Source of the DNA: Haliotis rubra
Lineage: Eukaryota
DNA: 64,000 bases
Reading direction: 5' to 3'
NCBI RefSeq assembly: GCF_003918875.1
Contig: NW_025767166.1
Location: 186,001 to 250,000, forward strand
The first letter of the stretch is position 1. Every line of letters starts with the position of its first letter. Both the position numbers and the translations under genes were made by a program. The notes under the pieces were generated by a model, which was given only the letters and a program-made list of their open reading frames with translations, ran no database searches and had not been told where the DNA came from. Below are positions 29,340 through 32,890 of the stretch, in pieces.

Positions 29340-32300
29340 TTGGGCGACTGGCTCGATTTTACAATAAAGACACTCGCCTCGCCATAAAAAAGGACAGTAC
29401 GGGATTGGCGAGTTGCTTGTCAGTTCACAACTCATCAGCCGAACTGCTTGTAGTTGACACGGCAGGATGCCTGCTCTCGCCAGCGCGCTGGCTCACTTGT
29501 GAGCGGAGCTATCTCACACTGTGCTGTTAATGTCCGCGACTTGGACTGAACTTCGCAGCTTAATCCGCGGATCCGCGGAAAGCACGGGAAGAGGGGCGTG
29601 AGTGTACCTCGTGTGAGGTAGCTTTGACGCGGCGGCTCAAGATTTTGTGTCGACATACTTGATCGTCAAATTTTATATGCGATCCGAAATAACAATGAAA
29701 AGTTATCAGAAGTAGCTAGCATGACTGTTGGGCTCAGATTAATCTGAGCGAGCAGGGCATAAGACCCGGTTGTCGACCATACGCAAGCATAACGTGTAAC
29801 AAGTGTCCAAATTTTCGACGATTCTCTCCATCATGCAGTTTTCCCCACGGATCCGATATTACTACTGAACAAACCTTACCGCTTAGAAGATCCGAAGTTC
29901 CACTAATGATCCGAAGAAAATACGTCACAACCAGGCAACGGGCTCACGGCCCATCGCTACGTGGTCACGGTACTCGTCTCCGTAGATTAAGCAGCGTTTG
30001 AAATCCGAGCAAACGCAGAAAACAACTATGGTAAAGCGAATCCGAAAACCGATGGCAAAATCCGAGATATTGGCTTCTGTTTCGTCATAGGTACCTGAGA
30101 ATCATCAACGTGAACAACGACAGGCGCTTTTCATTCGCCTCTTTTCCCGTGGCAAGGGATCCGAAAAAAATACTGCCCTACACTTTAAAAAAAAAAACCA
30201 ACGTTTTTTTTCCCCTCGTCGTGACCCCAATTGATATTAGGCCAGACCCTCCTCATCTGTGTGACCAGTGCAGACCAACAGCCGATGATCGGCGTTCTTG
30301 CACGTGTCCGTATCAGTTGGATTAGGGTGGTGGGTTTGATTGGTGGTAGGGTTGGGTTGGGTTGGGTTGGGTTGGGTTGATCTAAGTTGGGAGGGAGGTG
30401 GTGGGGGAAGGGAGGGGTTTAAGTGAAACTCCATGCTCGGCCAGATTTAAATCTCGATGTTATAATATTATTCTAATTAACCTGGTTTACGTAACATGCA
30501 TAATTGCAATTCCTCTAATTGGAAGTGGGGGGAGGTCACAATTAGGTATCTGTTTTGCCGTAATTGCTCTGACGTCAATGGTCCAGTAGTTGTTATTGTT
30601 TGTTGTTGTTGTTATTGTTATTGTTATTGTTTCGCACATTAACAAACACCTAGGACACACACACACTAAAGCCAACAACAACGCATTTTGTCAGAATGAA
30701 CTGGCCACCGGATCCGAAACTAACCAGACATGTCGGGCCCATGCACAGAAATTATTCTCGCGAGTGAGATTAATCTTGCCGTAATGGACACTAACTTCCC
30801 CGCTACTAGATGGCATGTAGTCGCCAATCCCGACGTTCAAAAATCAGCGAAGTTTCTATGAGTCATGCAGTTTTCCCCACCTGTCCGATATTACCATTGA
30901 AGCTGCATAGGGAGTCGGCATATCCGAAATTTGTTTGTCGCTAGCACTTCCTGGTGGTTTCGCTGAAGCTGTCGTGCCCGCTCCCGAGCATTCTCGACAA
31001 TCCTCCGTGCCATGTGGTCACGATGGTCGGTTTAACGCACCTCTATTGCATATTTTGTCCCTGATCCGAAATTAGAGCGTGAACAAAGTTTTGCTGAGAC
31101 GGATCCGATGCTAAGCGCGGTATTCGTTCCCATTTGCCGATGTCCTAAAACATGCCGAACAAATCGCCACAGTCACGGCGTTGAGCGGAGGGATTCCTCA
31201 AAAGATCGACTTCAATTCGCACTTCTGCACCGATCCGATGTTATCAAATAATCAACGCTAAGTGCCGGAAGATCCGAAGTTATGTGTGTAACCTGAGCCG
31301 GTTCATGTAGCCCGCGGGAACAACGGTTTAGTCAGTCATATGGTCTGCCAAAATGGACTGTCCTTAGGTTGTTTTGTATGCTTTGTTACGCCAACCAACT
31401 AGCTATTGACACCGTAATAAGTTCCAGAATATGCGTGTCTCTAAGAAACATTTGTCGTCATCAGAAGCCTCATAATGAGCTGGATATAATCATTCCTTCT
31501 AGAAAATAGATCTGTCACACTGTCCACATAATCAATCACCTTCTACAGGGCAGTCTATACACGTATATTATATATGATAGGTCCGGGGAAACCATGCGCA
31601 ATTCAAGGTTGTCAGATGGACACAGTTCATGATTACCCCATTTTGTGGTGACTGGTTCATGAAAGACCCACACACTTGGGGAACCGCAGGCCAGCAGAAC
31701 ATAATCATCTTGGAGTTGATGACCAGTTCCGATTTTAAAACACTGGACCAACTGGTTAAAAACTAAAACAAAATAATTTGCTAGACCACCTCCATATTAA
31801 AAATAGAATATAACAAACACTTGTTTGGCGGTGGAGTTTATTTAATAAGATAGGTAAACAAGCCGCTGAGGTGAAAAATATCCGACAGCCCAACACCGAC
31901 CTTAAAATACTATATATAAACACTACTGACACCATAATCATGGCATGTATTGAAGTAAAACTGAGCTATGAGTCATGTGGTACGCCGAACACAGCAATAT
32001 TCCAGCTATATGGCGGCATGCGTGGTTAAGAATAAAAGAGACAATTCCTGTTGTTATGCAAATTAAACGTCATGACACATAAATTCTGCAATTACATCAG
32101 TCACAAAAATATTTTTTCACTATCGCCAATCCATATAGCCACAACGTTGTGCTCAACTACATACACTAAGAACATTACTGAGTTTGCAAGTTTAAAATTG
32201 TCAATATCGAGAGTGTCAAATAACCAAGTCATATTCCATATGTCAGTCTATCGACCTATAAACTTCATGAACAGGATTAGTTGTTCGATGTACCCGACGC

Positions 32301-32890
32301 GCCAAGGAACAAAGAAACGCATTCGCGTCGTCAAAGGCGATCCGAAGTTATGGGGAAGCTTGCATTCTCGTATCTCGTGCTGAGTTCTCTGAATCATGTG
32401 TCGACCCACATCAGCTGCCCGGCGTTCGGCCATGGACTCGCGCGCGTCTCTACGTAACAGGGCCGCGGTCCATGTACAGCCTATTCAAGTAGCTTCGCGC
32501 AGCTCACGATTCCGCCAGATCCGAATTTCCGTAAAGCAACCTCCAAAGTCAATGAGGACTATTTTCCTCCGTCCTTACGTGTGCTCCTTAACCATGCGGA
32601 GCGTGTATTTTCCGGGCAAACATACATCATCCTCATTGATTAAGAAATCCGAAGTTACAGACAGTCGCAGTCAGCAATACATACGGATCCGAAATTACAC
32701 AGGGATCCGAAAAGTGTCAGTTCCCTCTGAGCACAACGACGCTCATTTGCCTGATATTTGTAACGCGTTCTTCTCAAGAACTGAGGTCCCAAAAATCCCA
32801 CAGGTTCGTGCCGATCCGAAATTACTACGAAACCGCGGGGCATTGGCAACCCGGTGCATTGTTGTAACTGGATTAGGGACACCGTGAACT
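29340..32890 (+). other. Unexplained non-coding CpG-rich region: three modules carrying 21 co-oriented ATCCGA (mostly GATCCGAA) motifs and many short palindromes
   Basis: Motif positions are listed in findings; no credible ORF, TIR pair or regular tandem period. Confidence 0.7.

What the first reader, a model, noticed from the sequence alone, without database searches (positions are those of the whole stretch)
29340..32890. Strand-polarised array of 21 ATCCGA (GATCCGAA) motifs in three CpG-rich non-coding modules
Seen: ATCCGA on the + strand at 29682, 29851, 29890, 29909, 30003, 30040, 30060, 30159 | 30712, 30922, 31064, 31103, 31233, 31272 | 31880 | 32340, 32519, 32647, 32687, 32705, 32814. 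Fifteen are GATCCGA, often extended to GATCCGAA(A/G)TT. I found no TCGGAT on the + strand in this interval. A given hexamer is expected about once per 4 kb per strand. Spacers are unique and irregular, so this is not a satellite, and there is no credible ORF or TIR pair. Modules (about 29340-30170, 30700-31320, 32290-32890) are separated by low-complexity or AT-rich sequence. Inference: a directional protein-binding platform, such as an unknown promoter/enhancer array, a small-RNA or ncRNA precursor cluster with a repeated processing signal, or a subterminal/origin region of an unrecognised large element. I know no described element that fits.
Basis: partly seen in the sequence, partly recalled or inferred. 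Interest (0 to 1): 0.8.

Follow-up and report, generated by a model that had tools for sequence, protein, structure and literature searches.

The report
One-strand GATCCGAA site array beside UFC1
A short DNA word (GATCCGAA) really is packed 21 times on one strand in three duplicated, CpG-rich, non-coding blocks just upstream of an abalone housekeeping gene; it most likely marks docking sites for one unknown DNA-binding protein, and its function here is untested.

Summary
There are 21 ATCCGA on the + strand at 29682-32814 and none on the - strand, against about 1 expected. The full word is [G/A]G-ATCCGAA-[A/G]-[T/A]-T-A. Sites sit on a lattice of about 19 bp, with distances of 18-19, 38-40 and 57-58.

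The three modules keep the same motif order. M1 and M2 are provable paralogues, offset by 1032 bp. They are not a transposon, satellite, coding sequence, structured RNA or virus-like iteron array.

The array lies 1.4-4.9 kb upstream of UFC1, which is on the - strand with its ATG at 27980, and it points away from UFC1.

The same word and lattice recur at about 20-30 other loci. One cluster lies 1.8 kb upstream of a PLAAT-like gene. All five of its sites keep identical spacing in H. asinina and H. cracherodii.

Sites are better kept than spacers. The modules diverge about 3-fold less than their flanks from a related organism.

Best reading: a cis-regulatory cluster of binding sites. The one-strand polarity comes from head-to-tail duplication. 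No usable RNA data were found.

The parts
27852..27980 (-). First coding exon of UFC1 (ATG at 27980). The other exons are at 24218-24373, 21456-21578, 20643-20744 and 19648-19713.
   Evidence: PF08694 exon-by-exon matches on C2276. Translation starts [41 protein letters not shown]. Pfam UFC1 hit on exon 2.
28085..28100 (+). Overlapping motif pair (ATCCG-ATCCGAAATT) about 105 bp upstream of the UFC1 ATG and antisense to UFC1. It is the leftmost member of the array.
28279..28838 (.). Insertion of about 560 bp (MITE-like, 27-nt inverted arms at 28285-28311 and 28519-28545) that is absent from contigs of a related organism.
   Evidence: Joint 28278>28839 in runs X3 and X4. Inverted repeat I1.
29340..29659 (.). 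GC-rich (51-54%), motif-free stretch upstream of module 1. It diverges as fast as the flanks.
   Evidence: There are 17 substitutions in 29162-29520 against organism A.
29660..30175 (+). Module M1 with 8 motifs at 29682, 29851, 29890, 29909, 30003, 30040, 30060 and 30159. It holds two lattice triples, 29851-29914 (39, 19) and 30003-30065 (37, 20).
   Evidence: CpG o/e is 1.3-1.45. At most 7 substitutions in 690 nt against organism A.
29809..29869 (+). 61-nt segment shared with M2 (30841-30901, 77% identity). It proves that M1 and M2 are paralogues, offset by 1032 bp.
   Evidence: D2; z=14.3 raw and 7.7 with the motif masked. An 18-mer and a 9-mer are found only in M1 and M2.
30176..30699 (.). 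Low-complexity spacer with a poly-A run and GGTTG and GTT microsatellites.
30700..31320 (+). Module M2 with 6 exact motifs at 30712, 30922, 31064, 31103, 31233 and 31272, plus decayed lattice sites at 30885 and about 31121.
   Evidence: 13 substitutions in 787 nt against organism A.
31321..32289 (.). AT-rich spacer holding a very high-copy repeat fragment (31981-32017) and one stray ATCCGA at 31880.
32290..32890 (+). Module M3 with 6 motifs at 32340, 32519, 32647, 32687, 32705 and 32814, including the lattice triple 32647-32710 (40, 18). Its motif order matches M1, but it cannot be aligned to M1 or M2 outside the motif.

Best explanation
The array is a homotypic cluster of recognition sites for one still unidentified sequence-specific DNA-binding protein. 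It is a cis-regulatory (promoter- or enhancer-type) platform in unmethylated, CpG-rich DNA between the UFC1 promoter and a transposon nest. Shown: the asymmetric word [G/A]G-ATCCGAA-[A/G]-[T/A]-T-A sits on a lattice of about 19 bp, typically three sites at 0, about 39 and about 58 bp. A unit of about 0.55 kb carrying two such triples plus outlying sites was copied head to tail, and M1 and M2 are provably copies at an offset of 1032 bp. Sites and their spacing were kept while the spacers mutated to saturation. Inferred: the protein binds the lattice in a fixed geometry. The CpG in the core would make binding sensitive to methylation. The one-strand polarity is a by-product of head-to-tail copying (slippage at the 19-bp scale, a sub-unit of about 150 bp, a unit of about 1 kb), not a requirement. 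The target is a + strand transcription unit running away from UFC1, or UFC1 itself.
For: Enrichment and polarity: 21 sites against 0.99 expected, and 0 on the other strand. Lattice: same-strand distances peak at 18-19 (10 times), 38-40 (18 times) and 57-58 (10 times) across the window plus 13 independent loci; inside the modules 8 of 17 intervals fall in these classes (P about 2e-6, classes chosen after seeing the data). Paralogy: M1/M2 z=14.3, and 7.7 with the motif masked. Constraint: in paralogues L039/L040/L044, motif columns are invariant 77% of the time against 36% elsewhere (P=4e-10). In the orthologous blocks of H. rubra, H. asinina and H. cracherodii the figures are 100% against 83% (P=0.005), and the spacing is identical at 38/29/28/112. 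Module divergence from organism A is 1.5% against 4.5% in flanks (P=2e-7). Gene-proximal setting elsewhere: a + cluster lies 1.8 kb 5' of a + strand PLAAT/LRAT gene, in the best-conserved block of that locus (88-90% against 84-86%). A - cluster lies 2.8 kb 5' of the first exon of a - strand ENPP-like gene. Here the array starts about 105 bp from the UFC1 ATG. No other motif co-occurs, so the cluster is homotypic.
Against: No binding, accessibility or expression data exist for this locus, and the RNA look-up was uninformative. No + strand host gene is visible downstream within 31 kb; only transposon ORFs are. The gene association rests on two sister loci. Distances of 18-19, 39 and 58 bp do not put sites on one face of B-DNA, so the lattice fits an origin from a 19-bp tandem repeat as well as it fits cooperative binding. 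The extended word is not over-represented genome-wide: 22 copies of the 13-mer, with close pairs at about 16 loci, fewer than a satellite-dominated control. Any regulon is therefore small. In the orthologous PLAAT block the spacers are also highly conserved, so that block does not isolate the motif as the selected unit. Lower divergence of the modules could partly reflect the lower mutability of unmethylated DNA.
Confidence: 0.5

Rival explanations
1. RNA-level element. The modules are exons of one or more non-coding transcripts made divergently from the UFC1 CpG-island promoter. GAUCCGAA(A/G)UUA is a repeated landing site for an RNA-binding protein or small RNA, as in a NORAD- or Xist-repeat-type platform. 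This would make the strand polarity functional.
For: The polarity over 4.7 kb is strict, and the array starts next to a promoter and points away from it. At several other loci, - sites lie to the left and + sites to the right of a gap of 78-166 bp, as expected around a bidirectional promoter. The + strand is not more structured than shuffles, as expected for an unstructured landing pad.
Against: There is no evidence of transcription: the two possible RNA runs cover only repeats. Some loci mix orientations within 100 bp (L041, L043, L044). The fixed 19-bp lattice and the CpG-island setting are more typical of DNA-level sites. Head-to-tail duplication already explains the polarity.
Confidence: 0.2
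2. Neutral relic. The clusters are decayed remains of old minisatellites of about 19 bp, or of a low-copy dispersed repeat, carried along by segmental duplications and without present function.
For: The lattice of about 19 bp, with units missing, is what a decaying tandem repeat leaves. Live tandem arrays with the same word exist, such as the 40-bp unit x 5.6 copies at C556. Several cluster loci are multi-copy paralogues, on C2707, C960, C902/C1593, C1125 and C2537. The word is not enriched genome-wide.
Against: Spacers are saturated while the core word and its spacing persist (77% against 36% invariant columns). All five sites of the PLAAT-linked cluster are identical in three abalone species. 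The modules diverge 3-fold less than their flanks. A neutral relic should lose its CpG-containing word first.
Confidence: 0.15
3. Part of a mobile or viral element. The array would be subterminal transposase-binding repeats (Ac/Ds or En/Spm style), an insulator array inside a retroelement (gypsy Su(Hw) style), or replication iterons of the neighbouring Maverick-like element.
For: The region borders a transposon nest: a Tc1-like remnant by eye at 34107-34517, an RT at 38218-38868, and polB at 47137-49286. Irregularly spaced short repeats in sub-kilobase blocks are typical of subterminal regions.
Against: M1 and M3 are single copy in 1.38 Gb. No inverted partner or TIR is present. The only 15-nt inverted pair (30686/32961) occurs 14 times genome-wide against a control of 6, so it is not a family terminus. 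There is no similarity to the rest of the window. Viral contigs show only scattered single pairs. The sister cluster in L042 is conserved at the orthologous place in three species, while the adjacent Tc1 copy is specific to H. rubra.
Confidence: 0.04

Closest known systems
Homotypic clusters of transcription-factor binding sites in promoters and enhancers (for example the Bicoid or Su(H) site clusters of Drosophila, or ETS/NRF1 sites in CpG-island promoters); comparison from established knowledge
   Same: One short word is many-fold over-represented within 0.2-0.6 kb of non-coding, CpG-rich DNA. Sites are conserved above spacers, and sister clusters lie 5' of genes.
   Different: The word matches no factor I can name. 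Orientation is uniform, and spacing follows a lattice of about 19 bp. Clustered loci number only in the tens, and binding is untested.
Su(Hw) insulator array in the gypsy 5' UTR (12 same-orientation sites in about 350 bp, separated by AT-rich spacers); comparison from established knowledge
   Same: A dense array of an asymmetric word of about 12 bp, all in one orientation, with non-conserved spacers.
   Different: It is not inside a retroelement and is single copy. The word is different, and no insulator test was possible.
Conserved sequence element of clustered protocadherin promoters (one oriented site per tandemly duplicated promoter); comparison from established knowledge
   Same: Polarity arises because whole promoter units were copied head to tail.
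   Different: Here there are 6-8 sites per unit and no recognisable gene behind each unit.
Subterminal transposase-binding repeats of Ac/Ds (AAACGG) and En/Spm; comparison from established knowledge
   Same: A short word repeated at irregular distances in blocks of a few hundred bp.
   Different: There are no termini, no inverted second end and no multi-copy family.
IRF/ISRE-type GAAA arrays such as the IFN-beta PRDs (AANNGAAA); resemblance recalled from memory
   Same: ATCCGAAA resembles AANNGAAA, and third sites often read CGAAAAGTG.
   Different: The fourth base of GAAA is A in only 53% of sites. The conserved part is ATCCGA, not GAAA. Sites are 18-39 bp apart, not 2.
lncRNAs with repeated protein-binding words (NORAD PREs, Xist A-repeat); comparison from established knowledge
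   Same: A strand-specific short word in diverged repeated units of a few hundred nt.
   Different: No transcript has been shown. The word contains CpG and lies in island-like DNA.

Membership tests
Homotypic TF-binding-site cluster / cis-regulatory module | A short word significantly over-represented in a sub-kilobase non-coding stretch | tested here: met
   21 observed against 0.99 expected; commonest hexamer of the region
Homotypic TF-binding-site cluster / cis-regulatory module | Sites conserved above neighbouring sequence | tested here: met
   Paralogues 77% against 36% invariant columns; orthologues of a sister cluster 100% against 83%. For this locus there is only module-against-flank divergence, 1.5% against 4.5%.
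Homotypic TF-binding-site cluster / cis-regulatory module | Placement at or near a transcription start or regulated gene | tested here: inconclusive
   The array begins about 105 bp from the UFC1 ATG but points away from it. Two sister clusters lie 1.8-2.9 kb 5' of genes on the same strand. No TSS data.
Homotypic TF-binding-site cluster / cis-regulatory module | Bound by a sequence-specific protein, with open chromatin or reporter activity | not testable with these tools
   No binding, ATAC or expression data were reachable
Satellite / minisatellite | Head-to-tail units that align with each other | tested here: not met
   TRF finds nothing in the modules at score 30. Spacers cannot be aligned. 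Only the spacing lattice recalls a unit of about 19 bp.
Transposable element, including subterminal repeat regions | Multiple genomic copies, terminal repeats, and an inverted second end | tested here: not met
   M1 and M3 are single copy; M2 was not searched. No TIRs. The 15-nt inverted pair is not a family terminus.
Structured ncRNA or miRNA/snoRNA precursor cluster | Match to a known family, or folding energy below shuffles | tested here: not met
   No Rfam match with E<0.2 in 27.5-33.5 kb. z-scores are +0.54, +0.27, -0.13 and +1.25.
lncRNA with repeated RBP word | The stretch is transcribed from the motif strand | not testable with these tools
   No RNA run holds the modules; X1 and X2 cover only repeats
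IRF/ISRE array | Invariant GAAA core in tandem, 2 nt apart | tested here: not met
   Position +7 is A in 48 of 90 sites; spacings are 18, 39 and 58
Viral or plasmid-type replication iterons | Same-strand repeats beside replication genes, with similar arrays in viral genomes | tested here: not met
   The nearest polB is 14 kb away behind other transposons. The viral-contig scan gave only isolated pairs.
Protein-coding repeat | The word is read in one frame of an open reading frame that has relatives | tested here: not met
   The motif falls in all three frames of the only long ORF; no Pfam hit and no homologues

The most novel reading that the evidence does not exclude
GATCCGAA on a 19-bp lattice is the docking array of an abalone-lineage DNA-binding protein that marks promoters of tandemly amplified, lineage-specific gene families. 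The gene-less triple module here is a promoter array driving a one-directional non-coding transcript (for example a piRNA-precursor-type RNA) from the UFC1 bidirectional promoter into the adjacent transposon nest.
Probability: 0.1. Interest if true: 0.75.

Novelty: new member of a known kind. Interest (0 to 1): 0.42.

Why it matters
Almost nothing is known about cis-regulatory codes in molluscs. This is a well-defined word of about 12 bp with a fixed lattice, held under purifying selection across abalone species and confined to a few dozen loci. That makes it a concrete handle: one oligonucleotide pull-down could identify the factor, and the small target set could define a regulon. For this locus it also shows that an intergenic stretch without genes, next to a transposon nest, is constrained DNA. 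The finding does not reveal a new kind of genetic element.

Tried and rejected
- **High-copy TE:** BLAST of M1 and M3 against the whole genome found only themselves. M2 was not searched.
- **TIR pair 30686/32961:** the 15-mer occurs 14 times genome-wide against 6 for the control, so it is chance.
- **Satellite:** TRF found nothing in the modules.
- **Coding:** the 163-aa ORF in M3 has no Pfam hit and no homologue, and the motif falls in all three of its frames.
- **Known RNA families and RNA structure:** nothing. The word resembles the 3' half of miR-10/miR-100 as I recall them; there is no hairpin or Rfam support, so I treat it as chance.
- **Viral iterons:** only scattered single pairs in phage contigs.
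there is no PF00531 match on this contig, and no tight extended-motif pair at any listed death-domain coordinate. That note is neither confirmed nor refuted.
- **Expression:** the run search found no RNA holder. X1 and X2 cover only repeats, and X3 and X4 are DNA contigs of a related organism.
- **Orthologues of this locus through UFC1:** no abalone UFC1 was returned. The best long contig (L173) is another mollusc, with exons only 77-79% identical, and has no motif cluster upstream of UFC1. I searched UFC1 exon by exon and did not build the joined spliced protein.
- **5' UTR test for the PLAAT-linked cluster:** the Logan contig L174 proved to be unspliced genomic DNA.
- **Literature:** the word occurs only in BamHI-tailed primers.
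- **Co-occurring second motif:** none.
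Full report
**Observation**

ATCCGA occurs 21 times on the + strand between 29682 and 32814, and its complement never does. A first-order Markov model of the region expects 0.99 per strand, and ATCCGA is the commonest hexamer there, with GATCCG and TCCGAA next. 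Fifteen sites have G before the hexamer and fifteen have A after it.

A matrix built from 90 clustered sites (window plus other loci) reads [G/A]G-ATCCGAA-[A/G]-[T/A]-T-A. Positions -1 and +6 of that matrix are partly inflated, because the extra loci were found with GATCCGAA.

TRF finds no tandem array in the modules. The only long ORF (163 aa, 32396-32887) reads the word in all three frames and has no family or homologue.

Four refinements:
- The site at 31880 is probably chance.
- Decayed sites at 30885 and about 31121 occupy expected positions.
- An overlapping pair at 28085/28090 extends the array to the left.
- CpG richness alone does not explain the word, because much of 1-18 kb has CpG o/e near 1 without it.

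**Anatomy**

The three modules keep the same motif order:
- M1: 29682, then intervals of 169, 39, 19, 94, 37, 20 and 99.
- M2: 30712, then 173 (to the decayed site), 37, 142, 39, 130 and 39.
- M3: 32340, then 179, 128, 40, 18 and 109.

M1 and M2 are true paralogues at an offset of 1032 bp. A 61-nt segment is 77% identical. The local alignment score is 14 SD above shuffles, and still 7.7 SD with the motif masked. An 18-mer and a 9-mer occur only in these two modules. M3 cannot be aligned outside the word (z about 2), so its kinship rests on motif order alone.

Across the window and 13 non-redundant loci, same-strand distances pile up at 18-19 (10 times), 38-40 (18 times) and 57-58 (10 times). 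The basic unit is therefore three sites at 0, about 39 and about 58 bp on a lattice of about 19 bp. Each position has its own flavour: first ...AAGTT, second GG...AAAYTA, third ...AAAAGTG.

**Context in the window**

PF08694 matches place UFC1 on the - strand, with exons at 19648-19713, 20643-20744, 21456-21578, 24218-24373 and 27852-27965. The ATG is at 27980. I looked at UFC1 exon by exon and did not build a joined protein.

The UFC1 promoter region therefore holds the 28085/28090 pair, antisense to UFC1. The modules lie 1.4-4.9 kb upstream of UFC1 and point away from it. Contigs of a related organism skip 28279-28838, so this insertion is recent, and the original distance from the ATG to M1 was about 0.8 kb.

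To the right lie only mobile-element ORFs:
- a Tc1-like remnant at 34107-34517, called by eye, with no Pfam hit;
- a reverse transcriptase at 38218-38868;
- DNA polymerase B at 47137-49286;
- an endonuclease at 52601-53206.

To the left of UFC1 lie an apextrin-like gene (MACPF plus ApeC, about 8.4-15.5 kb) and acidic ORFs.

**A genome-wide family**

M1 and M3 are single copy by BLAST; M2 was not searched. The word and its lattice do recur:
- The triple ATCCGA-(31-35)-ATCCGA-(11-15)-ATCCGA has about 11 non-satellite hits against about 1 expected, three of them in this window.
- The reverse order (18 then 39) adds small multi-copy groups on C2707, C960, C1125, C2537 and C2252.
- Tight pairs of the extended word occur at about 16 non-satellite loci.
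- The 13-mer GGATCCGAAATTA occurs 22 times, half of them in known cluster loci.

The word is not enriched genome-wide, so the family numbers in the tens. Ten-kilobase samples of 16 loci show clusters of 4-12 sites. Several have - sites on the left and + sites on the right of a gap of 78-166 bp. Apart from small paralogous groups (L039/L040/L044 and L033/L034), the loci share nothing beyond the word. No second motif co-occurs.

**Evidence of constraint**

1. In the paralogues L039/L040/L044 (68-70% identical), columns covered by the word in any copy are invariant 77% of the time, against 36% elsewhere (P=4e-10).
2. One cluster (L042) lies 1.8 kb upstream of a PLAAT/LRAT-type gene on the same strand. 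Its orthologous loci in H. asinina and H. cracherodii carry all five sites with identical spacing of 38/29/28/112, at 2.8-2.9 kb from the ATG. They sit inside the best-conserved block of the locus: 88-90% identity, against 84-86% around the coding exon. The neighbouring Tc1 copy is specific to H. rubra. Motif columns are 100% invariant against 83% elsewhere (P=0.005). Here the spacers are also strongly conserved.
3. For this window, DNA contigs of a related organism differ by about 1.5% inside the modules and about 4.5% in the flanks and spacers (32 of 2111 against 66 of 1481, P=2e-7). The counts come from per-piece totals, and the flank figure for 32834-33030 is obtained by subtraction. None of the listed differences in M1 hits a site, but too few differences exist to separate sites from spacers.
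4. A second gene-linked case: a - oriented sub-cluster lies 2.8 kb upstream of the first exon of a - strand ENPP-like gene.

**Excluded readings**

| Reading | Result |
|---|---|
| Transposon or terminus of a large element | M1 and M3 single copy; no TIRs; the 15-nt inverted pair 30686/32961 is at chance frequency genome-wide; no similarity to the Maverick-like element or the rest of the window |
| Viral iterons | Only isolated pairs in viral contigs |
| Structured or known RNA | No Rfam hit of note; folding no better than shuffles on either strand |
| Satellite | Nothing found by TRF |
| Coding | Motif in all three frames of the only long ORF; no family or homologue |

**Most likely mechanism**

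The conserved unit is an asymmetric word of about 12 bp at fixed distances, embedded in free spacers. It lies in unmethylated-looking, island-like DNA next to gene 5' regions. That is the signature of protein recognition sites.

I therefore read the array as a homotypic binding-site cluster of a cis-regulatory module (confidence 0.5). The one-strand polarity follows from how the array grew: slippage at the 19-bp scale, duplication of a sub-unit of about 150 bp (two triples in M1), and tandem duplication of a unit of about 1 kb.

Three points are inferred, not shown: that a protein binds, that the core CpG makes binding sensitive to methylation, and what the target is. The distances of 18-19, 39 and 58 bp do not put sites on one face of the helix. 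The lattice is therefore as compatible with descent from a 19-bp repeat as with cooperative binding.

**Rivals**

- **RNA-level landing pad (0.2):** a divergent transcript from the UFC1 promoter would make the polarity functional. It fits the divergent layouts elsewhere, but it has no transcript evidence.
- **Neutral relic of decayed minisatellites (0.15):** this fits the lattice and the small family size, but it conflicts with the three constraint tests.
- **Mobile-element or viral part (0.04):** largely refuted.

**Relation to known things**

The kind of element, a homotypic site cluster, is well known. The word, its lattice and its small, apparently abalone-specific set of loci are not described, as far as I know. 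A full-text search found the word only in BamHI-tailed primers.

The word resembles AANNGAAA (IRF) and the 3' half of miR-10/100. Both are resemblances from memory and fail simple tests.

I found no death domain on this contig, and no tight extended pair at the listed death-domain coordinates. That link stays untested here. The note that modules A and B are diverged paralogues (s1-344892) agrees.

**Limits**

- There are no usable RNA data.
- No orthologue of this exact locus could be fetched. Abalone UFC1 was not returned, and the one long contig is another mollusc without such a cluster.
- The gene association rests on two loci.

Noticed in passing
window 8411-15515 (+): Apextrin-like gene: ORF pieces with a MACPF domain (10036-10398) and the apextrin C-terminal domain ApeC (15138-15515). 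It is an immune-effector-type gene about 14 kb from the array.
   Followed up: partly
window 1360-3472 (+): Two long ORFs for an extremely acidic (Asp/Glu-rich) protein with repeated DDLTxxDVDDL motifs and a run of 14 methionines. There is no Pfam family above its cut-off. It may be a biomineralisation-type or secreted acidic protein.
   Followed up: partly
window 28279-28838: An insertion of about 560 bp with 27-nt inverted arms, absent from the contigs of a related organism (joint 28278>28839). It is a recent MITE-like insertion between the UFC1 promoter and M1.
   Followed up: partly
window 31981-32017: Fragment of a very high-copy repeat. It has word depths of about 270,000-830,000 in the DNA runs X4 and X3, and copies at 18198, 24596 and 54161 in the window and in most fetched loci.
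   Followed up: no
window 46273-52098 (+): Maverick/Polinton-like element: a cysteine-rich ORF and DNA polymerase B (PF03175) split over two ORFs, followed by further ORFs. Next to it are a reverse-transcriptase fragment (38218-38868, -) and a LINE-type endonuclease (52601-53206, -).
   Followed up: partly
L165 1491-1713 (G000:C556:41315-41537): Small live tandem array, a 40-bp unit x 5.6 copies. Each unit starts with the full word GATCCGAAATTAA, at the same 39-40 bp distance as in the clusters.
   Followed up: partly
G000:C2707 (154133, 164131, 207585, 355989), C960:15886, C902:1429080, C1593:8897; also C1125 (3 places) and C2537 (4 places): Two multi-copy groups of near-identical motif quartets or triples (18-39-18 lattice). 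Some lie 4.5-10 kb apart on one contig, as if attached to tandemly duplicated genes.
   Followed up: no
L033 2832-8837 vs L034 2651-8739: Six kilobases around one cluster are 92.6% identical between contigs C902 and C1593 (the latter only 38 kb long). This is either a segmental duplication or an uncollapsed haplotype.
   Followed up: no
L173 (ENA ERZ26859052 contig, another mollusc): UFC1 exons 1 and 2 are only about 1.1 kb apart there, and the 8.7 kb upstream holds no GATCCGAA cluster. The array beside UFC1 is therefore not a general molluscan feature.
   Followed up: partly
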